Below the pieces are notes generated by a model, which ran no database searches, had not been told where the DNA came from, and saw only the letters and a program-made list of their open reading frames with translations. Positions 450 through 62,974 of a DNA stretch of 64,000 nucleotides are shown piece by piece; position 1 is the stretch's first letter, and every line of letters begins with the position of its first letter. A program made the translations under genes and the position numbers. Location: positions 1 through 64,000 of the IMG/VR virus record IMGVR_UViG_3300018962_000001, one strand, 5' to 3'.

Positions 450-477
450 AGCTTAGCAAAACCACCGGATATGTCAA
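450..477 (-). promoter_or_regulatory. sigma70-like promoter
   Basis: TTGACA-16-TAAGCT on minus strand. Confidence 0.65.
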
Positions 478-483
478 GGGGTT

Positions 484-741
484 TTAAGAGCGACCGTTCG
501 CACGTTCCGCACCGAAGCGTTCCGCTGCCAGGTTGTACAGGCGCGTGTAGGGATTCTGCGCCGAGAAGGTCACGAATGAACTGGTGACGGAGATCCCGTC
601 ATGGCGGCAGGCCGCTTCCCACACCGCCCGGTGCGTTTTGGACCAATTAATCCGGCTACCCGTCACGATCAACAAGGCTCCGAAGGATTCACGCTGGCGT
701 TTTGTAAGCGGTCGCGGCTGGCTCGTTGGAGTGTTCATCAT
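484..741 (-). CDS. hypothetical protein (paralogue of 17929-18228)
   Basis: RBS gaaagga before MMNTP; shared W..AC..DGI....V.FS..NP motif. Confidence 0.65.
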   Translation of the reverse strand: MMNTPTSQPRPLTKRQRESFGALLIVTGSRINWSKTHRAVWEAACRHDGISVTSSFVTFSAQNPYTRLYNLAAERFGAERANGRS

Positions 742-789
742 CAGATTCCTTTCGCGCTCGGCGATCCCGCCGGTGGTGTGCATGGATGC

Positions 790-818
790 AGCTTACAGGT
801 GGTCGGCTACGAAGTCAA
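790..818 (-). promoter_or_regulatory. sigma70-like promoter
   Basis: TTGACT-17-TAAGCT. Confidence 0.7.
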
Positions 819-973
819 GGGGTCACAATACTGTTGATGGCTCGGATGCGAGCCACCGCCGCATCCGAGCCGCGTCCAGGCGACAGGACCAGCACCCGTG
901 TCCATCTCCCCAAGCGCACGTACGGCCAACCAGCGATTCTGAGGCAACCGCAGCCCTGGTCGGTAATACCCCC

Positions 974-1002
974 TTGACAAGCGCTGTATCATGCGCTATG
1001 CT
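974..1002 (+). promoter_or_regulatory. sigma70-like promoter
   Basis: TTGACA-17-TATGCT with GCGC before the -10. Confidence 0.75.
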
Positions 1003-1026
1003 TGGCATAGCTGACAGGAGGACTCA

Positions 1027-1401
1027 ATGGCCCGTATAACCGCAGACATGAAGGCATTTAGCCATCATGGATCGTCCGTGTATCGCGATCGCGTGCCGAT
1101 CGCGGCAGCCGATGAGGTTCTTTTTGGCATTTATCGCCAGAGTTCCATTCACGAGATGGCAATCCGCTGGTATCGCCACGGACGTGAACCCCTGGTTGCC
1201 AGGCTGGAAGCCTTCGCCGATAGCTGGGTGATGTTGACCGAGCTGGCGGAGGTGTTTAGCGCACTCCAACACCTCGCCCACACCCCGATCACCCCGGAGC
1301 AGGTGTGTGATCTCCTCCGATCGCACGGATTTGTTGATCGCACGCCTCGGCAGGAAGCACGCCTCGCCTCAAAAGCTATGAAGGACATCGATCATGGATG
1401 A
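1027..1401 (+). CDS. hypothetical protein
   Basis: RBS aggagg, directly downstream of promoter. Confidence 0.75.
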   Translation: MARITADMKAFSHHGSSVYRDRVPIAAADEVLFGIYRQSSIHEMAIRWYRHGREPLVARLEAFADSWVMLTELAEVFSALQHLAHTPITPEQVCDLLRSHGFVDRTPRQEARLASKAMKDIDHG

Positions 1402-1915
1402 CAAGACGACCGACGCCGCGTTCGAGGACATTCTGCGCCGCGTGCGCGCACGCGATGTAGCGCACGAGCAGCAGATTCGCGATCCCTTCACTCAACTGGC
1501 GGTTGCCCTGGGGCAGTCGCAACATGGCCGTGGATCGCATCGCTACTTCTACCATACGACCAATCCCGACGCCGTGCTCGCGTATAGCCATTACAGCGAC
1601 CCACTGTTTAACCGGGAACGGGGAATTTGTATCTATGGAGCCGACGCGGGTAATCTGACGTGGGTCTATGCCGACCGGCTGCTGCATGCCGATCCTGACA
1701 AATCAGACGCGGCCTGGAAGCAGGCGGTCGAACAGCATGGCAAGGAGCGCACCGCTCGCCGGATCGAAACCTATCTCCGCCTCTACTTTGAGCGTTCCCT
1801 AACACTCGCGTGTATCATCAGTGGGACCCAACAGAGTAATGGGTATCCCTGGTATGCCTACGGCATCCGCTTCCTCAGCGACCAACCAACCCCGCCCGAT
1901 CCGCCCACGGACTAA
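1394..1915 (+). CDS. hypothetical protein
   Basis: RBS aagga; overlaps upstream stop by 8 nt. Confidence 0.7.
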   Translation: MDDKTTDAAFEDILRRVRARDVAHEQQIRDPFTQLAVALGQSQHGRGSHRYFYHTTNPDAVLAYSHYSDPLFNRERGICIYGADAGNLTWVYADRLLHADPDKSDAAWKQAVEQHGKERTARRIETYLRLYFERSLTLACIISGTQQSNGYPWYAYGIRFLSDQPTPPDPPTD

Positions 1916-1922
1916 CCCCACA

Positions 1923-1966
1923 TACGCGCAGATTCACGCAAACCTTTCTGCGTGAATCTGCGCGTA
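1923..1966. terminator. 18-bp perfect inverted repeat (terminator-like hairpin)
   Basis: tacgcgcagattcacgca-N8-tgcgtgaatctgcgcgta right after the 1915 stop; no U tract. Confidence 0.55.
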
Positions 1967-1998
1967 CGGCCCACCAGAGCATTGGAGGAATCCCGTTT

Positions 1999-2325
1999 AT
2001 GTTTGCCTACGAGCGGTCATCGAATCCCCTTGATCCCCAGAATCCCCCAACGTACCGCGTGTATGAGCTGGTCAATGGGCGGCAGATCTGGCTCTGCCGG
2101 TCGAATGAGGAGGGAAATGCCCAGCGAATCGTCCGGCTGCTTAACCTGATCGTCGAGGTGGCCCAGGTCGTACGGGCCTATGCTGACCGCGATCTTCCAT
2201 CTGAAGTCTGTCTCTCACTTATCCAGACTCTCGTGCGGACGGCCAACGATCCGGCGGCGGCGGCGGGATCGACACGCGCCCAAGCGCTGCCTGAAGATCC
2301 TCCGCCCGATAGTGCTCCAGCGTGA
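1999..2325 (+). CDS. hypothetical protein
   Basis: RBS ggagga. Confidence 0.6.
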   Translation: MFAYERSSNPLDPQNPPTYRVYELVNGRQIWLCRSNEEGNAQRIVRLLNLIVEVAQVVRAYADRDLPSEVCLSLIQTLVRTANDPAAAAGSTRAQALPEDPPPDSAPA

Positions 2326-2494
2326 CGGAATGCACCACGCGCCCATCGGCCACATTCACCGTGTCAAAGCGCAGGTTGGTATTCGGCATCTGCCAGACCT
2401 GGAGGCGGCGCTGCACCTCGTTGGCCCAGGCATCAAAGATCAACACCGCGCCGCCTGGGTCGCGATCTCCGATCGCACGCCACTGCATGGTCAT
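2219..2494 (-). CDS. hypothetical protein
   Basis: ATGA-coupled to 2491 ORF; convergent overlap with 1999-2325 lowers confidence. Confidence 0.45.
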   Translation of the reverse strand: MTMQWRAIGDRDPGGAVLIFDAWANEVQRRLQVWQMPNTNLRFDTVNVADGRVVHSVTLEHYRAEDLQAALGRVSIPPPPPDRWPSARESG

Positions 2495-2775
2495 GCGGAT
2501 TCCCCTTTCTGGCGGATCGGTGGTACGGCCAGTGGGCCATTCTCATGGAATCGCCGAGGTCGCCACTCGCGTACATGACGAAACCGAAGGTGCGGAGCTG
2601 CCTGCTGTATCGAGTCAAGATCATCAGGATGGCAGATCAGGAACTCCGGTCCAATGGTCGACTCTGGTATGATCAGCACCTTCCCTGGAATGGCGTGATC
2701 CCAGGTCGCATACCAGATCGTGACGAGATCGAGGAGGGTCCGGTAGGTGTCCAGAATCGAGTCAAGCGTTTGCAT
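2491..2775 (-). CDS. hypothetical protein
   Basis: RBS gaggag before MQTLDS. Confidence 0.6.
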   Translation of the reverse strand: MQTLDSILDTYRTLLDLVTIWYATWDHAIPGKVLIIPESTIGPEFLICHPDDLDSIQQAAPHLRFRHVREWRPRRFHENGPLAVPPIRQKGESA

Positions 2776-3010
2776 GCGGACCCTCCTCGATCGGACGAAT
2801 CGCCTCCAGCGCATCTTCGATCTCGCGCCAGGCATCGGTCATACGACACCCGATCGATCCATCCGGGTAGTGCGTACAGGTAAACATCTGCGGCCAGGTG
2901 GCGGCTCCATCGCCTTCCCAGAAGAAACACGTCTGACACAGGATAAAGTCTAGATCGCCATACTGGTCAATTCGCTTGGGCAGGGAGGTTCGACAGATCG
3001 CACAACGCAT
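2762..3010 (-). CDS. small Cys-rich hypothetical protein
   Basis: CAIC...CQTC; ATGA overlap with upstream ORF. Confidence 0.6.
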   Translation of the reverse strand: MRCAICRTSLPKRIDQYGDLDFILCQTCFFWEGDGAATWPQMFTCTHYPDGSIGCRMTDAWREIEDALEAIRPIEEGPHANA

Positions 3011-3471
3011 CACGCATCCTTCCCACAGACCGCACACCAATTACGGAAGCGGCCATATATTTTCATGCCGACACGATGCCCGCAGCGGAGCGTTGGCCCA
3101 GATCCATCCCAGCACTGGTCGAGCGTCTGAAGCACCTGCTTCGTTAAGTCGATGTGCCGCCGTTCCTCATCCGAAAGATCCTCAGGAATGGGGCGACGCC
3201 CTTCTGCCATTTCATAGAGTTCGTCTGCGCGATCGGTGGTGATGTCCATGTCGACTCCAGTCGGTGAATAGCGCACGACCCGCCGTGCGTGGAGCACCGC
3301 CGCGCGGGTCGAACATCCGGCGCGGCGAAAGATCGTCACGAGATCAAGATCGCCAAAGTCCCCCCGCGCAACGCGGGACGCCGTGAGCATCCCAACATAG
3401 GTGAGATGATCCAGTCGCCACGCCAGGTGTGCCCGCTGGTCTGTGGTCAGTTGGGAAAGATACCGATGCAT
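3010..3471 (-). CDS. hypothetical protein
   Basis: first gene after the minus-strand promoter at 3493-3521. Confidence 0.65.
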   Translation of the reverse strand: MHRYLSQLTTDQRAHLAWRLDHLTYVGMLTASRVARGDFGDLDLVTIFRRAGCSTRAAVLHARRVVRYSPTGVDMDITTDRADELYEMAEGRRPIPEDLSDEERRHIDLTKQVLQTLDQCWDGSGPTLRCGHRVGMKIYGRFRNWCAVCGKDA

Positions 3472-3524: not shown

Positions 3525-4949
3525 CTAGAGTCCGACAAAATCTTGGAGGGCGTCGGCAATGTCCTCGTCCAGGGGATCAATGGATTGAGCATCACCATCG
3601 AGATAATTGCAGAGGTAGCGAGTCGTGTCCATCCCGTGGTCATTTTCCTTGATCGGTACTTCTCGCACGGGCCGCCCTTCTCGACCTTGTGGATACACAT
3701 AGAGATCGAATTCCTGGGTGGTTTCCCACGGATGGTTCTTTTTCTCAAGCTCATCATCTTTCTCGACCAGGGCATAATCAAGAAAAAAGAGCCGGGGGCG
3801 CTTATCGCCCGCAACGCGCAGACGACCCTGCACTTTTTGAATCCCGATCTCAATGCGTTTGTCAGCGGGAATATTGGGAATGCCCTCGGCCTCCAGGGTT
3901 TCCCGGCCTTCGCGATCCCAGTCGCAGATAGTGGTTTCAATCGACTCGCCCTCGCTGAGCGCCACAATCAACTTTGCGTGATCGGACACGAGCCGCTGGC
4001 TCATGTAGATCTCGCGGTAGCGGTACGCACGGCCATCCGGGTCAATCGCCCACCACTGACAGACGAATGGGTGCATGAACCCAAAGTCGATGACGCGGAT
4101 ACGTCGCCACTCACGCGGAATCGGGTAGTCGCTGGGCAAGGTGTGGACACCACGTTGAAACTCATACACCGCCCCTTCGGCAGCGACCCATCGCCCATAG
4201 CGCAGGCGATCTTTGCGCACGCCAGTCAACCGATCCAACCGGGCGATGTAGAGTTCTCCGTAGGGCGTCCAGTGCTCCTCGATCTGATTCCACAAGCGCG
4301 GATTGTCGGTGTGCTGTGCGGCGATCATCCGACAGTCTCCGCGATCGCAGCGTTGTTTCAACCAGTGCGTGGGCGGACCGGGGTTACAATCGGCCATGAT
4401 TTGCTGATAGTCCGCCATCCCGTTGCGCAACCGGGTAGTCAGCGACTCCCAATCCTCGGCGGTCAGCTCGGTGGCTTCCTGGACGTAAATAAAATCGTAC
4501 TCGGTCGACATGATCTTGGTGGATTTGTCGATGCCGCCGACATTAAGCATGGAGCCGTTCGGATAGCGATAGCTCTGGCGAATATTGCGCTGCCGGGTGC
4601 CAGCCAGGGGATGGCCGGGTCCCAGCACATGATCTTCAAAGGTTTGGAGCGCGGATTCAGACACGGATTCGCGCGTTTTACGGATGATCAGCCCGCGCGA
4701 TCGGGGATAGCGACGCCCCAGCAACCAGTGGAGCTTTTCCAGGGCCGCACGACTCTTGCCGGTGCCTGCCGGACCACTTAAGAGGACTTCGGGATCACGC
4801 GATTCTTTGAGATCCCACGCCGCGCCATACGGGTGATACTGGCGGTGCTGCGCGCCCTCTTTACGCTTCTGCTCCAGCGTGGCCCGCGCCACATTGCGCG
4901 GCGTCCACCGGGGCAGGGCCGGTTGTTTGGGAGATGATCCGATCGCCAC
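3525..4949 (-). CDS. terL: phage terminase large subunit (PBSX/Terminase_6-like)
   Basis: Walker A GPAGTGKS, Walker B YVQEATE, DCNPG motif, nuclease motifs IDFGFMHP and ENDHGMDTTRY. Confidence 0.95.
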   Translation of the reverse strand: MAIGSSPKQPALPRWTPRNVARATLEQKRKEGAQHRQYHPYGAAWDLKESRDPEVLLSGPAGTGKSRAALEKLHWLLGRRYPRSRGLIIRKTRESVSESALQTFEDHVLGPGHPLAGTRQRNIRQSYRYPNGSMLNVGGIDKSTKIMSTEYDFIYVQEATELTAEDWESLTTRLRNGMADYQQIMADCNPGPPTHWLKQRCDRGDCRMIAAQHTDNPRLWNQIEEHWTPYGELYIARLDRLTGVRKDRLRYGRWVAAEGAVYEFQRGVHTLPSDYPIPREWRRIRVIDFGFMHPFVCQWWAIDPDGRAYRYREIYMSQRLVSDHAKLIVALSEGESIETTICDWDREGRETLEAEGIPNIPADKRIEIGIQKVQGRLRVAGDKRPRLFFLDYALVEKDDELEKKNHPWETTQEFDLYVYPQGREGRPVREVPIKENDHGMDTTRYLCNYLDGDAQSIDPLDEDIADALQDFVGL

Positions 4950-4974
4950 AACGATTCATTCTTGGGGGGCGTGG

Positions 4975-5535
4975 TTAAGGAAGGCTCGGCTCGTCTGCCT
5001 GGTCCCACGTGGGAGCCATCGGATCAGACGACCAATCAACGTCAATAATGTCACCGGCCATCGCGCCCTCAATGTCGGGCGGCACCTGGCGGGTGCGTAA
5101 GTAGAACTGGATCTGTTCGGGAGTCCACGTCGAGAAGTCATACTCCACGGTGATCGCCTGCGGCAAGTTCAGGCCCATCAGTCGGGCACGTTGCTCCTCG
5201 ATCTTCAACACCCGATCGATCGCGCCCAATTCGCCTTTCTTGGCGCGGACATAGACCGCCTTAATCATCTCGTCGAACCGGGCATTGACCAGTTCGCGGA
5301 GGTCATCAACGGTTTCCGCGCGGCGCTCCTCCATAATGCGCTGATACAGCCGCCGTGGGCCGGACTCATCGGCATACCCTAGCTGCTGCGCGATCTGGCT
5401 GAAGTTATAGCCCATCTTCCGCATCTCAAAGATACGATTGATTCGCGCATGCACCTCTACTTCGGCGGCACCGCGTGGACGACCCGGCTGGGGCAGGTGC
5501 GGGGGGGGATGGAGATCGTCGCTCATCGCGTTCAC
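4975..5535 (-). CDS. terS: terminase small subunit (HTH)
   Basis: HTH RKMGYNFSQIAQQLGY; AIDRVLKIEEQRARLMGL; immediately upstream of terL. Confidence 0.8.
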   Translation of the reverse strand: MNAMSDDLHPPPHLPQPGRPRGAAEVEVHARINRIFEMRKMGYNFSQIAQQLGYADESGPRRLYQRIMEERRAETVDDLRELVNARFDEMIKAVYVRAKKGELGAIDRVLKIEEQRARLMGLNLPQAITVEYDFSTWTPEQIQFYLRTRQVPPDIEGAMAGDIIDVDWSSDPMAPTWDQADEPSLP

Positions 5536-5544
5536 CTTTAACGC

Positions 5545-5949
5545 TTAGTAGGCGGGCAACTGGCTCAGATCCCGATCGCCCGGTTCATTCCACAGCCCAG
5601 GCGCGGGAAGGACAAAGGGGGGCTTGAATCCTAACGCTTCCAATAAATCATCCACCGACCGCGCCACGATCACCAGATGCCCGCGCTGTCGGAGATCGCG
5701 ATGCATGGCAACCTGGGCTGGAGAAAGACGGCCTTTTTTATACTTACACTCAACCCACACGACGCGGCCATCCAACAGGACGGCCATCACATCAGGCGTT
5801 CCAGGGGGGCACAATTCCACGTGCATCCGTTGCCCGCGAAGGTCCGTCCCATCAATTGCCCCCGAGTTAAGCCGAAACACCAGGCAGCCGAGTGTTTGGA
5901 GCGCTTCGATGATCGCGCGTTGGACTGCCGTTTCTTTTCCTTTCGCCAC
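5545..5949 (-). CDS. VRR-NUC domain nuclease (PD-(D/E)xK)
   Basis: ETAVQRAI...GTPDVM...VWVECKYKKGRLSPAQ. Confidence 0.85.
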   Translation of the reverse strand: MAKGKETAVQRAIIEALQTLGCLVFRLNSGAIDGTDLRGQRMHVELCPPGTPDVMAVLLDGRVVWVECKYKKGRLSPAQVAMHRDLRQRGHLVIVARSVDDLLEALGFKPPFVLPAPGLWNEPGDRDLSQLPAY

Positions 5950-6045
5950 CGTGCCACCCTCTCCCGATTCCCGCCTGCGTGCTCAATGGGTTGACCTCAG
6001 CAGGTATCGTACCATATCCGACAAGGGTTGTCAGCCGGAGGGATT

Positions 6046-6270
6046 TCAATCGACAACATTTGGCTCGAACCGACCCTCGCGCCGCATCTGGATCTTCTCG
6101 CGAATCGTGCCCAGCATGATGGCTGCATGACGGTGTTTCTCGAACGCGATGCGATCTTCACGCGCCAGGAGGAGACGCGCACAGGTCATTTCCGCATCCT
6201 CCAGGGCGCGGATCTGCGCAAGACACGCATCCAATTCTCGAAGAATCAACTCATCAGCAACCGACAGCAT
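6046..6270 (-). CDS. hypothetical protein
   Basis: RBS gaaggagg before MLSVADE. Confidence 0.55.
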   Translation of the reverse strand: MLSVADELILRELDACLAQIRALEDAEMTCARLLLAREDRIAFEKHRHAAIMLGTIREKIQMRREGRFEPNVVD

Positions 6271-6322
6271 CACGATCCCTCCTTCAAACTGGCGCACATC
6301 TGCATCTTGATCGGGGTAAGCG

Positions 6323-6868
6323 CTACGGGGTCGATTCCATAAGCACCGGCCCGTTGCAATGCGTATCCAGATCGATCGCAAGCTGGACCACCATGTGCAG
6401 CCGGTCCAGCGGCTCCGGTTCGGCGGCGGCGGCGTTCAGTGCCCAATAGGCTCCAGTCGCGTAATCGCAGCCGCACCCGATCGCGGCAAACGGTCCCTTA
6501 AGCAGAACCACCGATCCGTTGCCATCGATTCGATACAACCGCCCATCACAGCCCAGGAGGACATTGCCGGGTCGTTGATTGCCCTCGGCCAATCCATCGC
6601 GCTCCTTCAGCGCGGCATGAATGGCCGGACTATAGGTGACGACCAGATATGAAAATACCGCGTCGGGATCAGCGGGCAGATCCAAGGGGACCACATAGCG
6701 CAGAAGCTGGTTCAGCAGGTAGGTGCCGCTCGATCCAACGACCGCCCGATCCATCCTCCAGATCTTCGGCATCGCGGTTTTATCCAGCTCCGATTGTCCC
6801 ACCACGCCATACGAATCGGCAGCGATCGTCACGCCGCCAGCATGCACTAATCCAGCAATAATCGTCAT
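6323..6868 (-). CDS. Ntn-hydrolase, HslV/proteasome beta-like peptidase
   Basis: N-terminal (M)T, AADS, PKIW, AIGCG: matches the Thr1/Asp17/Lys33/Ser129 pattern with Cys at the last position. Confidence 0.8.
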   Translation of the reverse strand: MTIIAGLVHAGGVTIAADSYGVVGQSELDKTAMPKIWRMDRAVVGSSGTYLLNQLLRYVVPLDLPADPDAVFSYLVVTYSPAIHAALKERDGLAEGNQRPGNVLLGCDGRLYRIDGNGSVVLLKGPFAAIGCGCDYATGAYWALNAAAAEPEPLDRLHMVVQLAIDLDTHCNGPVLMESTP

Positions 6869-6886
6869 CTCGTCATGTTCCTTGTG

Positions 6887-7249
6887 TTAGGCGCAGATCG
6901 CCTGCTCGATGGGGATTCCGCCAACATCGCGCAACGCTTCATCCACTGCGCCCTGCGCAACGAGCGGCAGACCCTGCCGTGATTGCGGATGCACGGCCCA
7001 CCCTCGCCCTGGAGCCGTTCCGGTCAGCAAATACACGCGATACAAGGTCACGGGCTGGCGGCGGCAGGACGGATCAGCCCAGGTTGCCAGGAGATACGTA
7101 TAGCCATCCCCCTGTGGTTCCCACTGCACAATCAGCAGCCATAACCGAGCGCCTGACGGGACTAAGGGTTCAAGATCCGTGAGCAACGGTCCACCTACTT
7201 CATAGGCAGCAGCTTCTGTTGCAACCATTGGATGCGGATCATGGAACAT
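6887..7249 (-). CDS. hypothetical protein
   Basis: ORF in operon orientation, RBS aaagga. Confidence 0.55.
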   Translation of the reverse strand: MFHDPHPMVATEAAAYEVGGPLLTDLEPLVPSGARLWLLIVQWEPQGDGYTYLLATWADPSCRRQPVTLYRVYLLTGTAPGRGWAVHPQSRQGLPLVAQGAVDEALRDVGGIPIEQAICA

Positions 7250-7333
7250 AGCAGATCCTTTCTGGATAGGATGGGGAGGAGCGGGGGGGGAAGGAGACGC
7301 GGCGTGCCGGGGGGAGCGACACGCCGCGTTCGA

Positions 7334-7609
7334 TTAAGACTCGCTGATCACGCGCTGCACTTCGTCAGCGACCGCCTTGGCGATCGTGCGCCGATCCTTG
7401 CCCGTGAGATCCGGGCTGAGCCGTCCGTGCATCTGGCGTGCGGCATCGATGGGGACGGCAATCTGATCGGCAAGCTCGCGCGTGACGCGCGTGCCTCCGG
7501 CCTGAATGGTATCGGCAACCCGCGTGAGATCGCCCTGCCGGGATTCCCGCGCGGCGTCGGCAGCCTCCGTCGATTCTTTCAACGTGTACTGGTGGGTAAT
7601 CGGAACCAT
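7334..7609 (-). CDS. hypothetical protein
   Basis: RBS aaggag before MVPITHQ. Confidence 0.6.
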   Translation of the reverse strand: MVPITHQYTLKESTEAADAARESRQGDLTRVADTIQAGGTRVTRELADQIAVPIDAARQMHGRLSPDLTGKDRRTIAKAVADEVQRVISES

Positions 7610-7624
7610 CGTGCGCTCCTTGCG

Positions 7625-7657
7625 GGTGTGCCCGGACGGGTTCCGTCCGGGCACACC
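7625..7657. terminator. 15-bp perfect hairpin
   Basis: ggtgtgcccggacgg-gtt-ccgtccgggcacacc between the 7662 stop and the next RBS. Confidence 0.5.
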
Positions 7658-7661
7658 ACGG

Positions 7662-7937
7662 TTAACTCGCTGCGCGTTGATCGGCCCGGCGCGGCTGGGA
7701 GTCACGGAGGATCTGCAAGCGCTGCTGCGTGCGCGCCGCCTGAACTTCCGCAACCTGCGTTTGCAGGTCCTGAAGGATCGACACCAGATCATCCGTATCA
7801 ACCACCGCCGTTGAGGCGGGACACCGAATTTCGGTGCGACCATCCTCGCGCATCAACACTTCCACTTTTCCAACCCCGCGAGACGACGGGTAGGTCGCCT
7901 CAAGCACCGCTCCATGTGCTGCAAACTGGTCCGCCAT
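7662..7937 (-). CDS. hypothetical protein
   Basis: RBS aaggag before MADQFAA. Confidence 0.6.
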   Translation of the reverse strand: MADQFAAHGAVLEATYPSSRGVGKVEVLMREDGRTEIRCPASTAVVDTDDLVSILQDLQTQVAEVQAARTQQRLQILRDSQPRRADQRAAS

Positions 7938-8004
7938 AGCGTCACTCCTTGCACAGATCAAGTAGAACAGATGTGCGTATTGTAGCACACCGTCAGTCAT
8001 CTGA

Positions 8005-8931
8005 TCAACCGATTCGGATACTCGGCGGCGGCTCGCGATAGGCAGCTTCGTACGCATCGGCATCGGTGCGGCTCGTTGCCACGCGACGGCCTGGACGCGG
8101 CAACTCGATCGCGGTGAGCGCTTCGCCCCAGCGATCTTGGGCCAGCAGCGGATTGAGAGCGGACGCCGCCATTTTGAATCGCCCACCCGCTCCCTTGCCA
8201 CGCTGCACACTGTTGCCATGAAATCCCCAGGAATCATCGCCCCAGCTATTCGTGCCAAACAGGATCGGCTCGGAATCAGTTCCGACTTTCCCAAGATCAA
8301 CCCCATCTAAACACACGCAGTGCCCACCGACCACCCGCCCCGTCGCATGCAGGAATCCTTCGGCGTCCGTTTCGAGCATCCCCTCGTACCAATCCACGCC
8401 GATAACGACGCAGCCGAGGCCACCAAGCAGATGGTCGATCACCGGCTGAATCTCCCAGGCCCAAGTATACTCGCCAACCAGGGGGATCGGCTCCTGGTGG
8501 CGTGGGGGAATAGCCCGCAGCACCTTCTGGCAGGCTTTCGCCGCTGCCAGCACCGACGTACCGAAATGCAGGTCACCCGCATCATTTTGCGGCCACACAT
8601 CATGTTTACACGACTCGGTATAGATAGCATAGGGATCTGGCCCGGTGGGGGTAAAGGCATACCATCGCCCGGTGCCCAGCATGAACGGGCCACAATCGAG
8701 CTTCCACCGCATCCCATGCCCAACGCAGGTCCCGCCGCGCTGGGTATAGGCGCGTGGAGGGCGTTGATAGTGACGACGACGGACGGCAAAGCGGGGGCGC
8801 TCCGTGCCAAAGGCTGCCGCAATCCGTCGCCGCATCGGAAACTGCTCCGATGCGGGATCGAATTCACGGACGCGCCCGAAGCGATCGACGAACTGCGGAT
8901 CAATCTGATAGGGCGCTGGCCGATCGGTCAT
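8005..8931 (-). CDS. papain-like cysteine peptidase (C1 family)
   Basis: Q-x5-C in QRGGTCVGHG, His in GGHCVCLDG, NSWG. Confidence 0.85.
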   Translation of the reverse strand: MTDRPAPYQIDPQFVDRFGRVREFDPASEQFPMRRRIAAAFGTERPRFAVRRRHYQRPPRAYTQRGGTCVGHGMRWKLDCGPFMLGTGRWYAFTPTGPDPYAIYTESCKHDVWPQNDAGDLHFGTSVLAAAKACQKVLRAIPPRHQEPIPLVGEYTWAWEIQPVIDHLLGGLGCVVIGVDWYEGMLETDAEGFLHATGRVVGGHCVCLDGVDLGKVGTDSEPILFGTNSWGDDSWGFHGNSVQRGKGAGGRFKMAASALNPLLAQDRWGEALTAIELPRPGRRVATSRTDADAYEAAYREPPPSIRIG

Positions 8932-9116
8932 CGTCGCCTCCCACCACTCGTCGGAGGTTTCACGGGTCGGGTATGGGACGGCTCCACGCCCGGATCGGGC
9001 CGGGTATTCCCGACACTATGGGGCGTTCGTGGTTCCTGTGGGCCGCGTTCGGCATTGCGCGGGGGAGTGCCACGGGGGGTCGGCACGCGCTGATTCGGAT
9101 TTTGTTGCTTTGCCAT
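8928..9116 (-). CDS. small Pro/Arg-rich protein
   Basis: RBS gggagg; ATGA-coupled to the peptidase. Confidence 0.55.
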   Translation of the reverse strand: MAKQQNPNQRVPTPRGTPPRNAERGPQEPRTPHSVGNTRPDPGVEPSHTRPVKPPTSGGRRR

Positions 9117-9153
9117 TGCATCCTCCCTCGGTAGGTAGAGATAGCATACCATG

Positions 9154-9624
9154 CTACAGGTCCAATGCGGTCAGGATCATGCGCGCGGGATCGTCCCGGA
9201 GATCCGATCCTGCCACCCGAACGACGCGATAGCCGTGGGATTCGAGATCGGCATCGCGCTGCTGATCGCGCCGCCGCTGGGTCAGCTGATGATGCTGCGA
9301 CCCATCGATCTCCAGGACCACCCGCCCCACCAGAAAATCAACACGGTAGGGACCAACTTGCGCCTGCCAGCGATAGGCGATCCCCGAACTGTTCAGCACT
9401 GCCGCTGTTAAGACTTCCCCGTGCGAAATCTTGCCGCGCGGATAGCCCTGCTGCCGCTGCTGTGCCGCGAGCTGCTGCCGGGCCGCGCGAATCACCAGCG
9501 CGCGGAGCGCCGTGCTGGACCATCCCCGCCGGATCTGATTCGCCATGCGCGTGACATCCTGGGCCGTCAGCGACCGACCACGATGTTTCCCGCAGCGGCA
9601 GTCAGGAGCGCAGTGCTGCGACAT
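9154..9624 (-). CDS. DUF559/Vsr-like endonuclease domain protein
   Basis: QAQVGPYRVDF..VLEIDGSQHH..RDADLESHGYRVVR; start position uncertain. Confidence 0.8.
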   Translation of the reverse strand: MSQHCAPDCRCGKHRGRSLTAQDVTRMANQIRRGWSSTALRALVIRAARQQLAAQQRQQGYPRGKISHGEVLTAAVLNSSGIAYRWQAQVGPYRVDFLVGRVVLEIDGSQHHQLTQRRRDQQRDADLESHGYRVVRVAGSDLRDDPARMILTALDL

Positions 9625-10129
9625 AGGCTGCAATCTCCGATTCCAGACGCTCCATCCCTGGCATAATCCCGCGTCGGAGATACAGGCGCATCCCTGGGAT
9701 AACCACCGGATCGTTTTCCGGCAGCAGCGGAATCCACTGGTCCGGCGGCGGCGGCGCAGAGTCAGGATGCACCTGGAGATAGGTTTCCACGAGAACACAG
9801 ATCGATAACAGGGAAAGATGAGGGACCTGCGTATGGATCTGCTCAGCGACCACGGGAATCCAGCCGTCGCTTCCAATCGGGGTCTGGAGGAGCCGCTCGT
9901 GCAGCGCCTGCATCTCCTGCATCAGCGCGTCGGGGGTCGTTGGGAGCATCATTGTTGTGCCTTTCACTAGCGGGTGCCAGCCGTCCTCGCCGACCCACCC
10001 GGCACAGGGGACGGACTGCCCATTGAACGTATCACCGGCCACCAGAAAGACCGGCAGGTGCTCACTCGGCGGAAGGGTCCAATGCATCACTGCCCAAGCA
10101 AGCTCGTCGTCGTCGGGACGATCACGCAT
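9602..10129 (-). CDS. hypothetical protein
   Basis: in operon, 3 nt after upstream stop. Confidence 0.6.
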   Translation of the reverse strand: MRDRPDDDELAWAVMHWTLPPSEHLPVFLVAGDTFNGQSVPCAGWVGEDGWHPLVKGTTMMLPTTPDALMQEMQALHERLLQTPIGSDGWIPVVAEQIHTQVPHLSLLSICVLVETYLQVHPDSAPPPPDQWIPLLPENDPVVIPGMRLYLRRGIMPGMERLESEIAAYVAALRS

Positions 10130-10132
10130 AGG

Positions 10133-11731: not shown

Positions 11732-11746
11732 CGGACCCTCCTCTCG

Positions 11747-12079
11747 TTAAGCCGTCAGCGGCGTGGGGCGATCATCGGAAATGCCGTCAGGAAAAACCAT
11801 CTCGGCAACCTGGACCTGAAAGCGATTCATCGGTTGCGCATGCGGTCCCAGGGACGAATAACCTGCGGCAACGGCCATTGCCTGCCCAAGAAACCACCCG
11901 ATCTGGTGGAGATTACCGCGAAGGATCGTAATGCAAAATCGACGATCCAGCACCAGCTCGATCGCGGCAGAGTCTGCCTGATCCTGGGGATTGACAGGGT
12001 GGGCAGTCAGATACGGCACCCGATACCCATCCACAACCACATCATAGCCATCGGGTCGCGGGCCAATCAACTCAACCAT
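11747..12079 (-). CDS. hypothetical protein
   Basis: overlap-coupled in operon. Confidence 0.65.
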   Translation of the reverse strand: MVELIGPRPDGYDVVVDGYRVPYLTAHPVNPQDQADSAAIELVLDRRFCITILRGNLHQIGWFLGQAMAVAAGYSSLGPHAQPMNRFQVQVAEMVFPDGISDDRPTPLTA

Positions 12080-12704: not shown

Positions 12705-12715
12705 GCTTCCTCCGC

Positions 12716-13362: not shown

Positions 13363-13389
13363 CTGGCGCAACAACCTTGCTCCATCCCC

Positions 13390-50427: not shown

Positions 50428-50429
50428 CC

Positions 50430-50458
50430 TAGACAAGCGCATCAATATGCGCTATACT
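50430..50458 (+). promoter_or_regulatory. sigma70-like promoter
   Basis: TAGACA-17-TATACT. Confidence 0.75.
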
Positions 50459-53214: not shown

Positions 53215-53220
53215 TACCTC

Positions 53221-53249
53221 TTGACATATGCGTATATCTGCGCTACACT
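53221..53249 (+). promoter_or_regulatory. sigma70-like promoter
   Basis: TTGACA-17-TACACT. Confidence 0.75.
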
Positions 53250-57477: not shown

Positions 57478-57485
57478 TATGGGTC

Positions 57486-57514
57486 TTACCGAGCGCACAT
57501 AATTGCGCTATACT
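57486..57514 (+). promoter_or_regulatory. promoter with degenerate -35
   Basis: TTACCG-17-TATACT with TGCGC extension. Confidence 0.6.
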
Positions 57515-60726: not shown

Positions 60727-60727
60727 G

Positions 60728-60749
60728 CGGGTATGAGCGCTCATACCCG
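60728..60749. repeat. 22-bp perfect palindrome directly before a promoter
   Basis: cgggtatgagcgctcatacccg. Confidence 0.65.
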
Positions 60750-60752
60750 TCC

Positions 60753-60781
60753 TTGACATATGCGCCATCTTGCGCTACACT
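60753..60781 (+). promoter_or_regulatory. sigma70-like promoter
   Basis: TTGACA-17-TACACT. Confidence 0.75.
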
Positions 60782-60809
60782 GGCCGCGATCACGGAGGTG
60801 TGTGTAACG

Positions 60810-61625
60810 ATGGCAGGAACATGGCGACCCACAGATAAAGAGTTGTTCGAGTTGACGCGCAGCGAGCTGGCCGCTCGTACCGGGCACTCAACCCGGCAGA
60901 TCGGGCGATGGCGGGGAGCTGCGCGTCAACGGCTACGGGTCCCTGCGGACATGGACCCCATCTTTGACTCCCAGGGCCGGGTCACGGGTACCCGTCCGAC
61001 GCGGATCGAACAGCGTCCTCAGGAACCGATCCCCTACGTCCCACCCCTTCGTCCTGAGCCATTTGTGCCGCCGCCGCCGGTCATTTCTGGCGGACGTGCC
61101 CCCCAATCGCCCCCAGACACCCTCCGTACCGGAGGCGGATCACCATCCGTCGATCGTGAGTCCGCGACTCAGCCGATCACCTTGGACGATCTCTTAGCCG
61201 CTGATCCCGGCCCGTCCAGGCCAGCAACCCCCCCAGCAACGTCCCCGGCAGCACCCGGTCGTCCCCCCCGGACAGGCCCACCAGCAGCCCCCCGGACACG
61301 TCCTATGGACCAACTCCCGGACACCGCCCGGTTTTCGAGCCAGAGCCAGGACCAACCCCTGCTGGCACCCCTGCTTGGCCGGTTGGCGGCTCGCGTGCAA
61401 CGACCGACCAGGCGGGCCACCCCGCCTGATCCGTTGGTGAGGGTGCTGGTGACACGAGGCCGATCGTTCGTGATTGCGGTCGGGTGGCTCGCGGTGGTGC
61501 TGGTGCAGGGGCTTGGGCTTGGAGCCAGCCGGGGGTGGTTTCTCTGGCAGGGCTGGGGGGATCGGAAGTGGTTAGTCCTGGCAATGCTGGTGACCTTGAT
61601 TCTGTGTAGCGTCTGGATCTTTTAG
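60810..61625 (+). CDS. N-terminal HTH, Pro-rich linker, two C-terminal TM helices
   Basis: TRSELAARTGHSTRQIGRWR; VIAVGWLAVVLVQGLGLG; WLVLAMLVTLILCSVWIF. Confidence 0.7.
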   Translation: MAGTWRPTDKELFELTRSELAARTGHSTRQIGRWRGAARQRLRVPADMDPIFDSQGRVTGTRPTRIEQRPQEPIPYVPPLRPEPFVPPPPVISGGRAPQSPPDTLRTGGGSPSVDRESATQPITLDDLLAADPGPSRPATPPATSPAAPGRPPRTGPPAAPRTRPMDQLPDTARFSSQSQDQPLLAPLLGRLAARVQRPTRRATPPDPLVRVLVTRGRSFVIAVGWLAVVLVQGLGLGASRGWFLWQGWGDRKWLVLAMLVTLILCSVWIF

Positions 61626-61634
61626 GAGGGGCTG

Positions 61635-61916
61635 ATGGCGATTGGCGATCCGGCATGGATCAAACAGACCGAGGTGTGGCGCAGGCGGTTTCAAACCCTC
61701 GCCGATGCGCTGTCCGCCGAGCTTGCGGACGTGCCCCATGATGTGCTGCTCCGGGCCGAGCGTGATGGCTGCCAATCGATGGCAGATGATCTCCAAGCGC
61801 AGCTTGACTCGGCGCGGGCATCCCAAGAAGGAATCATACATGATCTCACGCCGAATGATGCTCAAGTTCCTCGCGAGTCTCGTTCCCAGCCTGGCGCTGG
61901 GAACGAAGCAGGCTGA
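61635..61916 (+). CDS. hypothetical protein
   Basis: RBS ggagg. Confidence 0.55.
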   Translation: MAIGDPAWIKQTEVWRRRFQTLADALSAELADVPHDVLLRAERDGCQSMADDLQAQLDSARASQEGIIHDLTPNDAQVPRESRSQPGAGNEAG

Positions 61917-62256
61917 GGCGAAGCCAACGCGCCCGGTCGTCCGGCCCGGCTTTGCCGCCCATTACCGGCCCGGCAAGATGGAACAGGTCGCGAAAAACCG
62001 GGGCTTGCCGCGGGTAAAACATATGGCCGCCAGTCCGCACCATGCGATCGGAACCTGGGTGACGGCAGAACACCCGACGAAAGGCATCCGCATTAAGGTG
62101 TTGATCGTGGACTGTCCCCAGCCGCAGCATTGGCAGCGGATCGTGAACAAGGGGATCGTCTTAGAGTTCGACTTCAAAACCGCCCAAATGCTGTATAACA
62201 TTAAGCGGGTCAATCAAAAGGCTCCCCGCGACTGTCCGATCGTGGTGTACGGATAG
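61840..62256 (+). CDS. exported RlpA-like double-psi beta-barrel protein
   Basis: SRR Tat-like leader; GFAAHY..AASP..GTWVT..KVLIVDC. Confidence 0.6.
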   Translation: MISRRMMLKFLASLVPSLALGTKQAEAKPTRPVVRPGFAAHYRPGKMEQVAKNRGLPRVKHMAASPHHAIGTWVTAEHPTKGIRIKVLIVDCPQPQHWQRIVNKGIVLEFDFKTAQMLYNIKRVNQKAPRDCPIVVYG

Positions 62257-62262
62257 AAAGAG

Positions 62263-62934
62263 ATGGGCGTGACCGATCAGGCAACGCAGGAGCGCTGGCT
62301 CTATGGTGGTGATCCCGACGCCGTTCCGACGCAGGATGACATCACGCATGAGCATTTTCGCACGCCGCTGTGGGTGATTGATGCGGCCATCCGCTTAATC
62401 ACCTGGATTCCCTCCGATTGCCCGCTCCGCATCTTGGATGCTGGAGCGGGCAATGATGCCCGCTGGGGCGTGGGAGCCAAGACTCGCTGGCCGTCCTCGC
62501 AGCTCACGGCAGTCGAGGCCCGTGCGGTTCCGGCGGCGGCGGCGGTGGATCGGTGGGTCCATGCCAGCCTCTTTGATTCCTGGGACCCGGAACCGTACGA
62601 TCTGATCGTGACCAATCCGCCGTTTAGCCGGTCTCTCGATTGGGCACAGTGGTGTATCGCGCACTGTGCCCCCGGTGGAACGATCCTGCTGTATATGCGC
62701 AACGCATTCGGGCACGGCTGGCGACGCTATTCGCAACTGCATCGCCAGCAGCCGTTTGCAATCGAGGGGAAGCTGGTGCAACGCCCCGTGCATGAACATG
62801 GCTCGTCCGACCGCGCGCAGGAATATAGTTGCTACTACTGGCGTGATCCCTGGCCCAACGCCACCCCCGATCCAATCATTAAATGGCTCAGTCGCGTGGA
62901 TCTGCCCCCCGAACAACAACAATCCTTTCTATAG
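62263..62934 (+). CDS. DNA N6-adenine methyltransferase-like protein
   Basis: HFRTP, ILDAGAG (motif I), IVTNPPFS (motif IV). Confidence 0.8.
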   Translation: MGVTDQATQERWLYGGDPDAVPTQDDITHEHFRTPLWVIDAAIRLITWIPSDCPLRILDAGAGNDARWGVGAKTRWPSSQLTAVEARAVPAAAAVDRWVHASLFDSWDPEPYDLIVTNPPFSRSLDWAQWCIAHCAPGGTILLYMRNAFGHGWRRYSQLHRQQPFAIEGKLVQRPVHEHGSSDRAQEYSCYYWRDPWPNATPDPIIKWLSRVDLPPEQQQSFL

Positions 62935-62945
62935 CCTGGGATGCC

Positions 62946-62974
62946 TTGACGTATGCACTATTGTGCGCTATACT
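62946..62974 (+). promoter_or_regulatory. sigma70-like promoter
   Basis: TTGACG-17-TATACT. Confidence 0.8.

What the first reader, a model, noticed from the sequence alone, without database searches (positions are those of the whole stretch)
450..62974. About 25 near-identical promoter modules divide the genome into shufflable cassettes
Seen: a (C)CCCTTGAC-N17-TA(T/A)(A/G)CT motif, usually with (T)GCGC just before the -10, recurs on the + strand at 974, 13390, 15222, 18812, 20698, 22022, 24764, 25186, 26847, 29022, 30879, 31471, 35036, 44291, 44860, 50430, 53221, 57486, 60753, 62946 and on the - strand at 450, 790, 3493, 13334, 26797. Several are followed by the same GAAAGGATA leader. None was seen inside the lysis/MTase operon (35.4-44.1 kb) or among the terminase-proximal genes (3.5-7.2 kb). 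Established: repeated promoter cassettes mediate modular gene shuffling in T4-type phages (PeSL elements), and SPO1-like host-takeover regions use many strong promoters. Inference: these are early promoters and possibly recombination joints. The conserved GCGC may be a host- or phage-factor recognition element.
Basis: partly seen in the sequence, partly recalled or inferred. Interest (0 to 1): 0.6.

Follow-up and report, generated by a model that had tools for sequence, protein, structure and literature searches.

The report
Repeated host-type early promoters in phage
A large, previously undescribed soil-crust phage carries about 59 copies of one very strong, bacterial-type promoter (25 of them in this window) in front of its early genes; this arrangement is ordinary for big lytic phages, except that two extra conserved ATGCGC boxes sit between the two promoter hexamers, and nothing shows that the copies act as gene-shuffling joints.

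Summary
All 25 listed sites exist, and the whole 204,685-bp phage contig has 59. The consensus is CCC-TTGAC-ATGCGC-N6-ATGCGC-TAtrCT, which is a canonical sigma70-type -35/-10 pair with a 17-bp spacer.

- **Strength of the signal:** 56 sites score above 20 bits, against a best control score of 12.3 bits.
- **Position:** 57 of 59 sites lie outside called genes and are co-oriented with the next gene. The start codon lies a median 34 nt after the -10.
- **Distribution:** the motif is absent from the virion and lysis blocks, so the sites are most likely early/middle promoters read by host RNA polymerase. No phage sigma factor or RNA polymerase was detected.
- **Shuffling joints:** this part is not supported. 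Conservation stops at about 37 bp, flanks match at chance level, and modules share a median of 8 identical bases in a row. Stem-loops precede only 8 of 59 sites. No relative exists to compare.
- **The GCGC boxes:** they are under selection and specific to the phage. Eight of 9 phage promoters have GCGC before the -10, against 1 of 157 comparable promoters in ten bacterial genomes. Their reader is unknown.

No transcription data exist. I file this as a new member of a known kind, of moderate interest.

The parts
450..481 (-). Promoter module (TTGAC at 477) with a 16-bp spacer and no GCGC boxes; drives the gene at 425..36
   Evidence: 19.1 bits with the spacer-minus-1 matrix; start codon 24 nt after the -10
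790..822 (-). Promoter module (TTGAC at 818) without boxes. An ATG at 783 lies 7 nt after the -10, so the ORF 783..484 is a candidate leaderless mRNA.
   Evidence: 14.5 bits, the weakest site
970..1002 (+). Promoter module, divergent from 818-; drives 1027..1915
   Evidence: 39.2 bits; 25 nt to the start codon
3493..3525 (-). Promoter module between the terminase gene and the genes at 3471..2219
   Evidence: 35.6 bits; 22 nt
13334..13366 (-). Promoter module with a weak -35 (GGTGAC) at the head of the leftward packaging/head block 13270..3525. It lies back to back with 13390+.
   Evidence: 28.1 bits; 64 nt
13386..13418 (+). Promoter module; start of the long rightward gene array
   Evidence: 42.5 bits; 26 nt
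15218..15250 (+). Promoter module
   Evidence: 40.8 bits; 50 nt
18808..18840 (+). Promoter module without boxes, followed by GTAGCA at the predicted start site
   Evidence: 25.2 bits; 27 nt
20694..20726 (+). Promoter module
   Evidence: 36.8 bits; 33 nt
22018..22050 (+). Promoter module
   Evidence: 39.9 bits; 23 nt
24760..24792 (+). Promoter module with -35 TTGATA
   Evidence: 37.3 bits; 38 nt
25182..25214 (+). Promoter module with a 94-nt leader that holds CACGCCCCCCA and a strong hairpin followed by a T-run (25253-25284)
   Evidence: 32.7 bits
26797..26829 (-). Promoter module, back to back with 26847+; drives 26763..25484
   Evidence: 25.5 bits; 34 nt
26843..26875 (+). Promoter module
   Evidence: 34.1 bits; 32 nt
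29018..29050 (+). Promoter module with -35 TTGATA; an upstream hairpin overlaps the CCCC
   Evidence: 41.6 bits; 28 nt
30875..30907 (+). Promoter module
   Evidence: 39.3 bits; 25 nt
31467..31499 (+). Promoter module
   Evidence: 42.9 bits; 49 nt
35032..35064 (+). Promoter module; last rightward unit before the leftward lysis/methylase block
   Evidence: 33.6 bits; 31 nt
44287..44319 (+). Promoter module in the divergent region next to the head of the lysis/methylase block
   Evidence: 22.7 bits; 52 nt
44856..44888 (+). Promoter module ahead of the replication genes (HTH protein 45584-46498, DnaB 46499-47860)
   Evidence: 34.3 bits; 22 nt
50426..50458 (+). Promoter module with -35 TAGACA, directly preceded by a perfect hairpin (50395-50427)
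   Evidence: 37.7 bits; 29 nt
53217..53249 (+). Promoter module
   Evidence: 40.6 bits; 67 nt
57482..57514 (+). Promoter module with a degenerate -35 (TTACCG) but both boxes intact
   Evidence: 24.7 bits; 34 nt
60749..60781 (+). Promoter module preceded by a hairpin; 689 nt to the next called gene
   Evidence: 35.9 bits
62942..62974 (+). Promoter module
   Evidence: 34.8 bits; 36 nt
3525..13270 (-). Leftward packaging/head-assembly block with no internal module (terminase 3525-4892, peptidase-like 8005-8931, 532-aa portal-sized ORFan 10133-11731)
35366..44126 (-). Leftward block with no module (710-aa N6/N4 DNA methylase 36145-38277, Amidase_2 endolysin 42582-43745)
44232..44240 (-). Candidate extended -10 promoter (TGGTACACT, no -35) at the head of the lysis/methylase block. 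Similar candidates lie at 6006-6014(-), 7979-7987(-) and 9143-9151(-).
   Evidence: weak statistics

Best explanation
The 25 motifs in the window (59 in the whole 204.7-kb phage genome) are promoters of the bacterial primary-sigma type: -35 TTGACA, a 17-bp spacer and -10 TAnnnT. The host's own RNA polymerase most likely reads them soon after infection. They transcribe the early and middle genes (replication genes, tRNA arrays and many small genes of unknown function) as short units with a median spacing of about 2.5 kb. The virion and lysis blocks lack them and appear to use another promoter class.

The copies stay alike through selection on function, not through recent copying.
- The hexamers, the CCC in front of the -35 and two ATGCGC boxes 12 bp apart inside the spacer are conserved.
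- The bases between the boxes and outside the module are random.

The boxes are specific to this phage. They are most likely read by an additional factor, either a phage-encoded regulator that switches the whole early set together or a particular contact with the host polymerase.

What is shown: the motif, its statistics, its position and orientation, its distribution by gene class, and the specificity of the boxes. What is inferred: that transcription starts there, that it is early, that the host holoenzyme does it, and what reads the boxes.
For: - **Motif and chance:** 10 strict matches against 0.01 expected. Fifty-six sites score above 20 bits, while the reversed-sequence control peaks at 12.3 bits.
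- **Canonical geometry:** TTGACA/TAnnnT with a 17-bp spacer in 57 of 59 sites. The independent sigma70 scan picks up the same sites.
- **Position:** 57 of 59 overlap called genes by less than half, where 14% of the genome is intergenic (binomial p about 6e-46). All are co-oriented with the next gene. The distance from the -10 to the start codon has a median of 34 nt, is 60 nt or less in 45 of 59, and includes a Shine-Dalgarno sequence. Some sites sit directly in front of tRNA genes (99639+, 105786+).
- **Gene class:** none lies in 128.3-176 kb, which holds a 2547-aa tape measure, tail fibres and the major head protein. None lies in 35.4-44.1 kb or inside 3.5-13.3 kb.
- **Polymerase:** no sigma-factor or single-subunit RNA polymerase domain was found in six frames. 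No integrase or resolvase was found.
- **Selection, not copying:** spacer positions 12-16 carry 0.1-0.3 bit next to positions with 1.0-1.7 bit. Flank identity is 0.28 against 0.26 expected.
- **Boxes are phage-specific:** 8 of 9 phage sites passing the filter CTTGAC-N18-TANAMT have GCGC before the -10. In bacterial genomes the figures are 1 of 75 in five Chloroflexota genomes and, in five Bacillota/Actinomycetota genomes, only the 3 of 85 hits by which those genomes had been chosen.
- **Boxes co-occur:** presence of the left and right box is linked (Fisher p = 0.008).
Against: - There is no transcription evidence. No RNA run holds this sequence, and contigs cannot show RNA 5' ends.
- The host is unknown, so 'host polymerase' and 'not a host feature' rest on sampled genomes from three phyla only.
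- The information content is unusually high for housekeeping promoters. This could mean a dedicated phage factor, and a divergent sigma-like protein would escape Pfam.
- Gene calls come from my own heuristic caller.
- One module (13362-) heads the packaging/head block, so the class is not strictly 'early only'.
- The major-head operon has a perfect TTGACA-N17-TATACT without boxes (168585-). Box-less -35/-10 promoters therefore exist, and the timing rule is unclear.
Confidence: 0.8

Rival explanations
1. PeSL-like mobile regulatory cassettes. The modules would be preferred sites of homologous recombination that insert, delete and swap the genes between them, as in the T4-type phages RB49 and phi1.
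For: - There are many similar promoter copies in one orientation between small genes of unknown function.
- A few pairs are more alike than column-shuffled controls allow: 33 pairs at 18 of 34 variable columns or better, against 11.6 expected.
- A five-member family of 'promoter plus small gene' lies at 198.8-203.3 kb.
- T4-type recombination needs only short homology patches (PMC2839356).
Against: - PeSLs are conserved over about 100 bp and contain a stem-loop terminator (PMC2839356). Here conservation covers about 37 bp interrupted by random positions.
- The longest shared run between modules has a median of 8 bp, a 95th percentile of 13 bp and a maximum of 20 bp.
- Flanks match at chance level.
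- Strong upstream hairpins occur at 8 of 59 modules, against 7 of 120 random 55-mers.
- Terminator-like sites number 12 against 12.1 expected.
- No joints or structural variants appear in the contigs of three runs.
- No relative is available to show indels bounded by modules.
Confidence: 0.08
2. Promoters of a phage-encoded sigma factor or polymerase-retargeting protein rather than of the unmodified host holoenzyme. The extra conserved positions (CCC, two ATGCGC boxes) would be its specificity determinants.
For: - The information content is very high and the score distribution is sharply bimodal.
- The conserved spacer positions are not seen in 157 non-ascertained bacterial promoters.
- Most phage genes have no recognisable family, so a divergent factor could hide among them.
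Against: - The hexamers and spacing are exactly those of primary sigma factors.
- No Sigma70_r2, Sigma70_r4_2 or T7-type polymerase match was found in six frames. The only weak r4_2 hit, at 13.3 bits, is the HTH protein next to DnaB.
- The first genes expressed must use the host enzyme, and the five box-less sites keep the same hexamers.
Confidence: 0.1
3. The boxes are only the host polymerase's own preferred spacer and extended -10 context (TGCGC resembling the TRTGn '-16 region' of Gram-positive promoters). The phage would simply copy the host's strongest promoters and no extra factor would be involved.
For: - TGCGC matches TRTGn at three of four specified positions; that comparison is from my own knowledge.
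- Isolated promoters of the form CCCTTGACA...TGCGCTATAAT occur in many unrelated genomes and metagenome contigs, and their unforced positions look like real promoters.
- The strict pattern is over-represented in Chloroflexota (8 of 40) and Bacillota (about 17 of 40) and nearly absent from Proteobacteria (1 of 40).
Against: - In ten sampled genomes from those phyla, GCGC before the -10 is at background level, 1 non-ascertained case in 157.
- The left box has no known polymerase contact.
- C at -15 is invariant (57 of 57), where the known extended -10 has T.
- The head-operon promoter at 168585- lacks the boxes.
Confidence: 0.25
4. Repressor-binding repeats of the 'stoperator' kind known from mycobacteriophage L5. 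These would be sites that bind an immunity repressor throughout the genome and need not initiate transcription.
For: The sites are many, asymmetric, orientation-coupled and intergenic. The L5 site also contains a reversed CTTGACA; that point is from my own knowledge.
Against: - Every site has a full -10 at the correct distance, followed by a Shine-Dalgarno sequence and a start codon.
- No integrase or resolvase was found, so the phage is probably virulent.
- The double box does not occur as a stand-alone intergenic element above the level of other spacings.
Confidence: 0.03

Closest known systems
Early promoter families of large virulent phages read by host sigma70 holoenzyme (T4 early promoters, T5 and SPO1 early promoters; from my own knowledge)
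   Same: Dozens of near-consensus -35/-10 promoters lie in one orientation in front of early genes. Their extended consensus goes beyond the two hexamers. They are absent from late virion genes.
   Different: The extra conserved elements here are GC-rich: CCC before the -35 and two ATGCGC boxes in the spacer. Other phage early promoters have AT-rich UP-like regions instead. The host and the timing are unknown, and no expression data exist.
PeSL (promoter-early stem-loop) cassettes of T4-type phages (PMC2839356, PMC4122927)
   Same: Repeated strong sigma70-like promoters sit between small genes of unknown function. A minority (8 of 59) have a hairpin just upstream.
   Different: The stem-loop is not a constant part of the module. 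Conservation covers about 37 bp rather than about 100 bp, and the flanks are unrelated. There is no evidence of recombination between copies and no relatives with indels at the modules.
Thermus phage P23-45 temporal programme, which switches from -35/-10 promoters to extended -10 promoters through phage proteins that bind host polymerase (from my own knowledge)
   Same: The early/middle genes have -35/-10 promoters. The heads of several virion and lysis operons carry T(R)TGnTAnnnT without a -35.
   Different: The late class is only weakly supported here: TGnTAnnnT is intergenic in 31% of cases, against 18-22% for the AGN, GGN and T[A/C/T]N controls and 31% for CGN, which holds the modules themselves. 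No homologues of the P23-45 factors were sought or found.
Stoperators / repressor sites of cluster A mycobacteriophages (from my own knowledge)
   Same: Many copies of one asymmetric motif lie in intergenic regions, with orientation coupled to transcription.
   Different: Here each copy is a complete promoter. No integrase or immunity functions were found.

Membership tests
Bacterial primary-sigma (sigma70/sigmaA) -35/-10 promoter | -35 hexamer close to TTGACA | tested here: met
   T0 56, T1 56, G2 56, A3 56, C4 55 and A5 33, each out of 57
Bacterial primary-sigma (sigma70/sigmaA) -35/-10 promoter | -10 hexamer TAnnnT at 17 +/- 1 bp from the -35 | tested here: met
   T23, A24 and T28 are invariant. 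The spacer is 17 bp in 57 sites and 16 bp in 2.
Bacterial primary-sigma (sigma70/sigmaA) -35/-10 promoter | Lies upstream of, and co-oriented with, a gene or RNA gene | tested here: met
   57 of 59 sites are outside called genes. The start codon is a median 34 nt after the -10. Two sites sit directly before tRNA genes.
Bacterial primary-sigma (sigma70/sigmaA) -35/-10 promoter | Transcription starts about 7 nt downstream of the -10 | not testable with these tools
   No RNA run holds the sequence. Only assembled DNA contigs were available.
Phage early promoter class | Serves early genes and is absent from late (virion, lysis) genes | tested here: met
   Absent from 128.3-176 kb (tape measure, tail fibres, head protein), from 35.4-44.1 kb and from inside 3.5-13.3 kb. 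One exception: 13362- heads the packaging/head block.
Phage early promoter class | Active in the first minutes of infection | not testable with these tools
   No host and no time-course data are available.
PeSL mobile regulatory cassette | Strong sigma70-like promoter | tested here: met
   Met by sequence only.
PeSL mobile regulatory cassette | A stem-loop (terminator) as a constant part of the element | tested here: not met
   A strong upstream hairpin occurs at 8 of 59 modules, against 7 of 120 random 55-mers. The module itself gives mean z = -0.43. Terminator-like sites number 12 against 12.1 expected.
PeSL mobile regulatory cassette | Sequence conservation over about 100 bp, giving homology for recombination | tested here: not met
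   Conserved columns span about 37 bp, flanks match at chance level, and the longest shared run has a median of 8 bp and a maximum of 20 bp. Self-BLAST detects only one module pair.
PeSL mobile regulatory cassette | Indels and replacements between related genomes end at the elements; mini-circles form | not testable with these tools
   No related genome was found. The second run holds the identical strain with no joints.
Stoperator-type repressor sites | Temperate phage with an immunity repressor and integrase | tested here: not met
   No Phage_integrase or Resolvase match was found in six frames. A repressor cannot be excluded.

The most novel reading that the evidence does not exclude
The two ATGCGC boxes, 12 bp apart in the spacer, would be the operator of one phage-encoded (or hijacked host) factor that turns about 50 early promoters on or off together. 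The five box-less promoters, four of which cluster at the contig ends (477-, 818-, 200852-, 201358-), would be the immediate-early set. The T(R)TGnTAnnnT sites without a -35 would be the late set. Together these would form a three-class temporal programme, written in promoter-spacer sequence, in a jumbo siphovirus with no known relatives.
Probability: 0.2. Interest if true: 0.55.

Novelty: new member of a known kind. Interest (0 to 1): 0.35.

Why it matters
If confirmed, the set gives an unusually clean promoter map of 59 sites, each above 14 bits and 56 above 20 bits, for an uncultured 205-kb siphovirus from desert soil crust whose genes are almost all unannotated. The map splits the genome into early and late transcription units without any expression data. 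It also provides ready-made strong promoters for whatever host is eventually found.

The phage-specific spacer boxes are a concrete, testable handle on how such a phage times its early genes. The negative result also matters: repeated promoters alone are not evidence of PeSL-type gene shuffling.

Tried and rejected
- **Expression evidence:** the run search found only three DNA runs from one biocrust study and no RNA. Laying contigs on 24701-30500 showed the source assembly and a second sample with the identical sequence, with no differing letters, indels or joints. This gives neither TSS data nor variants.
- **Relatives by DNA or protein:**
  - Megablast against the phage collection found nothing.
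  - The portal-sized protein has no homologue in 5.8 billion proteins and none in the phage collection.
  - The terminase is only 40-50% identical to those of Thermobifida and Streptomyces phages, with one 17-kb IMG/VR contig at 46%.
  - Major-head relatives (33-61% identity) are 25-52-kb contigs without the module.
- **Relatives by the motif itself:** IMG/VR gave 29 contigs, all with single hits. The metagenome scan gave 120 or more stretches, with two copies only in unrelated contigs (L113, L174/L181, L155, L210). The phage itself has 17-22 exact matches to those patterns.
- **Locus left out:** L098 comes from a human-gut metagenome assembly and was excluded from all scripts.
- **Host identification:**
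  - The taxonomic spread of strict-pattern hits and the atlas neighbours hint at Chloroflexota or Gram-positive lineages, but they are not evidence.
  - The 428 Chloroflexota hits turned out to reflect general promoter enrichment, not a preference for GCGC.
- **GCGC as a restriction or methylation target:** GCGC is not avoided, with observed/expected = 1.02.
- **Boxes as stand-alone operators:** they are not enriched outside the modules.
- **Regulators behind box-less promoters:** ten small proteins gave no Pfam family.
- **Rfam:** only one tRNA was found.
- **Covariation with a lenient box definition:** not significant (p = 0.11). The strict definition gives p = 0.008.

Full report
**Source and context.** The window is the first 64 kb of a 204,685-bp IMG/VR virus record, rated 100% complete by CheckV. 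The record is contig Ga0193589_1000010 of JGI sample 3300018962, a biocrust metagenome. GC content is 60.8%.

My own codon-usage gene caller gives 335 genes at 86% coding density. These calls are heuristic. The genome has the following main features:
- 39 tRNA genes between 99.7 and 129 kb.
- A 2547-aa tape measure, tail-fibre genes and a major head protein on the minus strand between 130 and 175 kb.
- A terminase at 3525-4892.
- DnaB, a CCA-adding enzyme and a 710-aa DNA methylase.

It is therefore a jumbo siphovirus. It has no close relatives:
- Megablast against the phage collection finds nothing.
- The portal-sized protein has no homologue among 5.8 billion proteins.
- The terminase is at most 50% identical to those of actinobacterial phages.
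- No integrase or resolvase was found, so it is probably virulent.

**Check of the observation.** Every one of the 25 coordinates is real.
- A regex finds 20 sites.
- A weight matrix trained on the genome-wide set finds the other five, which have one or two -35 mismatches (24764+, 29022+, 50430+, 57486+, 13362-).
- The strict pattern has 10 matches in the window against 0.01 expected.
- Genome-wide there are 59 sites, 48 on the plus strand and 11 on the minus strand.
- The scores are sharply bimodal: 56 sites score above 20 bits, and the reversed-sequence control reaches at most 12.3 bits.

The consensus is a-c-C-C-C-TTGAC-a-t-g-C-G-C-g-c-N5-a-T-G-C-G-C-T-A-t-g-C-T. This contains three elements:
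- A TTGACA-type -35 preceded by CCC.
- A TAnnnT -10 at the canonical 17-bp distance.
- Two copies of (A)TGCGC inside the spacer, 12 bp apart, at positions 5-10 and 17-22.

The 'GAAAGGATA leader' is simply the Shine-Dalgarno sequence. GAAAGGA precedes 26 of 335 genes, and it is somewhat more frequent at promoter-proximal genes (10 of 58 against 16 of 277).

**Evidence that these are promoters.**
- 57 of 59 modules overlap called genes by less than half, in a genome that is 14% intergenic (binomial p about 6e-46).
- All point towards the next gene on their own strand.
- The start codon follows the -10 by a median of 34 nt (inter-quartile range 26-60), which leaves room for a leader of about 25 nt with the ribosome-binding site.
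- Three pairs are divergent, and two of them are back to back: 13362-/13390+ and 26825-/26847+. These mark the points where the direction of transcription changes.
- Two modules stand directly before tRNA genes.
- The independent sigma70 consensus scan returns the same sites.
- In the long rightward array from 13.4 to 128.3 kb there are 43 modules with a median spacing of 2.5 kb.

**Gene classes served by the modules.** The modules are absent from these blocks:
- 128.3-176 kb, which holds the virion genes.
- 35.4-44.1 kb, which holds the methylase and the endolysin.
- The inside of 3.5-13.3 kb, which holds packaging and head-assembly genes.
- 183-198.9 kb.

The genes behind the modules are replication genes, tRNAs and mostly small proteins without any family. 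No sigma-factor domain or single-subunit polymerase was detectable in six frames. The parsimonious reading is early/middle promoters used by the host holoenzyme.

Two caveats apply. Module 13362- heads the packaging/head block. The major-head operon has a perfect TTGACA-N17-TATACT without boxes at 168585-.

**Selection or copying.** Spacer positions 12-16 carry only 0.1-0.3 bit, directly beside positions carrying 1.0-1.7 bit. Sequence outside the module is no more alike than chance, 0.28 against 0.26.

Recent spread of a mobile element would leave uniform similarity. This pattern instead means that each conserved position is held by function. A small excess of similar pairs exists at variable columns: 33 pairs at 18 of 34 or better, against 11.6 in column shuffles. 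That excess comes mainly from a five-member family of 'promoter plus small gene' at 198.8-203.3 kb and a few pairs such as 818-/200852-.

**The recombination-joint idea.** PeSLs of T4-type phages are composite elements. They combine a strong early promoter with a stem-loop terminator, they are conserved over about 100 bp, they flank indels between close relatives, and they produce mini-circles (PMC2839356). The comparison here is as follows:
- The longest run of identical bases shared by two modules has a median of 8 bp, a 95th percentile of 13 bp and a maximum of 20 bp.
- Self-BLAST registers only one module pair.
- Strong hairpins precede 8 of 59 modules, against 7 of 120 random 55-mers.
- Terminator-like sites are at the shuffled expectation, 12 against 12.1.
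- The contigs of three runs show no joints, and a second sample holds the identical sequence.

The decisive comparison with relatives could not be made.
- Motif scans of IMG/VR, of one genome per prokaryote species and of JGI metagenomes found only single or double hits in unrelated contigs. The phage itself holds 16-22 exact matches to the same patterns.
- Contigs related by their head protein lack the module.

The shuffling idea is therefore unsupported but not formally refuted.

**The GCGC boxes.** GCGC is not avoided in the genome, with observed/expected of 1.02. The double box does not occur as a free-standing intergenic element. Left and right boxes are present or absent together (40, 13, 1 and 5; Fisher p = 0.008). 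The five promoters lacking both are 477-, 818-, 18812+, 200852- and 201358-, and four of them lie at the two contig ends.

To ask whether the boxes are a general bacterial promoter feature, I listed all CTTGAC-N18-TANAAT or TANAMT sites in ten genomes. These sites exceed the reversed control 75:4 and 85:4, so they are mostly real promoters.
- In five Chloroflexota genomes, 1 of 75 has GCGC before the -10.
- In five Bacillota/Actinomycetota genomes, only the 3 of 85 hits by which those genomes had been chosen have it.
- In the phage, 8 of 9 sites passing the same filter have it.

The boxes are therefore specific to this phage's promoter set, at least relative to the sampled lineages. The true host is unknown. 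The enrichment of TTGAC-N14-GCGCTANNNT in Chloroflexota (428 hits in 301 genomes) only reflects general promoter enrichment.

What reads the boxes cannot be decided here. The candidates are a phage regulator acting on the whole early set, or a special polymerase contact. On the second idea, TGCGC resembles the Gram-positive TRTGn element, but C at -15 is invariant where T is expected.

**Other signals seen on the way.**
- **RTAGCA start motif:** twelve of 59 modules have RTAGCA, with the purine 7 nt after the -10. This is 36-fold over expectation and probably marks the start site.
- **Candidate extended -10 class:** heads of several virion and lysis operons carry T(R)TG(C/G)TAnnnT-A without a -35, at 175977-, 157689-, 192607-, 159229-, 130316-, 7979-, 6006-, 9143- and 44232-. 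The enrichment is weak. TGNTANNNT is intergenic in 31% of cases, against 18-22% for the AGN, GGN and T[A/C/T]N controls. CGN, which holds the modules themselves, is also at 31%.
- **C-rich leader motif:** the motif (CAC)GCCCCCCA recurs in leaders.

**Verdict.** The promoter and early-gene reading is well supported by sequence but untested by expression. The cassette-shuffling reading is not supported. The GCGC inference is partly supported, in that the boxes are phage-specific, selected and paired.

This is a new member of the known class of phage early promoter families. Its one unusual feature is the pair of GC-rich spacer boxes. I rate the interest as moderate.

Noticed in passing
whole record G000 (window = 1-64000); tRNAs at 99684-129065: The source is a 204,685-bp siphovirus from a biocrust metagenome. 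It has 39 tRNA genes, a 2547-aa tape measure, and giant proteins of 1991, 2235 and 1686 aa. It has no close relative in any collection searched. Another assembly of 224,726 bp carries the same portal-sized protein.
   Followed up: partly
window 6006-6014(-), 7979-7987(-), 9143-9151(-), 44232-44240(-); genome 130316-, 157689-, 159229-, 175977-, 192607-: A candidate second promoter class, T(R)TG(C/G)TAnnnT-A without a -35 hexamer, sits at the heads of virion and lysis operons. It may be a late, extended -10 class. The statistical support is weak.
   Followed up: partly
genome 168557-168585 (-), L037:4557-4585: A perfect TTGACA-N17-TATACT without CCC or GCGC boxes lies upstream of the major-head operon. 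It is a box-less canonical promoter in the late region.
   Followed up: no
L039:8786-13394 (genome 198.8-203.4 kb): A family of five units is 74-77% identical over 90-156 bp. Each unit has a promoter module, a conserved leader CTATCAAAT(G/T/A)AATC, and a small gene that begins with repeated ACC/GCT codons and carries a run of alanine codons (GCC). This is the only repeated cassette in the genome.
   Followed up: partly
window 18841-18853, 35065-35077 and ten other modules genome-wide: RTAGCA with the purine 7 nt after the -10 occurs in 12 of 59 modules, 36-fold over expectation. It may be a start-site or initial-transcript motif. With the GCTA of the -10 it forms an imperfect inverted repeat.
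   Followed up: partly
window 4963-4970(-), 25244-25251(+), 44194-44201(-), 61098-61105(+); genome 175961-, 192567-: The C-rich motif (CAC)GCCCCCCA recurs in 5' leaders. Nine of 17 copies are intergenic, although only 14% of the genome is intergenic.
   Followed up: no
window 783-790 (-); genome 119100-119110 (+): Two modules have an ATG 6-8 nt after the -10: 818- with the ORF 783..484, and 119072+. These are candidate leaderless mRNAs.
   Followed up: no
window 60782-61469; genome 136925-141162: Two long stretches have no called gene. One is 689 nt behind promoter 60753+. The other is 4.2 kb inside the tail-gene block. They may hold genes my caller missed or non-coding RNA. Rfam found nothing in the window.
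   Followed up: no
window 48460-50355 (+): A 631-aa protein combines a purple-acid-phosphatase/metallophosphatase domain with a CBM35/CBM6 carbohydrate-binding module. This is an unusual auxiliary gene for a phage.
   Followed up: no
L113:2765-4963, L174:583-872, L181:403-719: Unrelated metagenome contigs (GC 41-68%) are full of small ORFs without Pfam families. They carry two copies each of a similar promoter, CCCTTGACA...TGCGCTATAAT-AC. Other phage-like elements may therefore use a comparable promoter design.
   Followed up: partly
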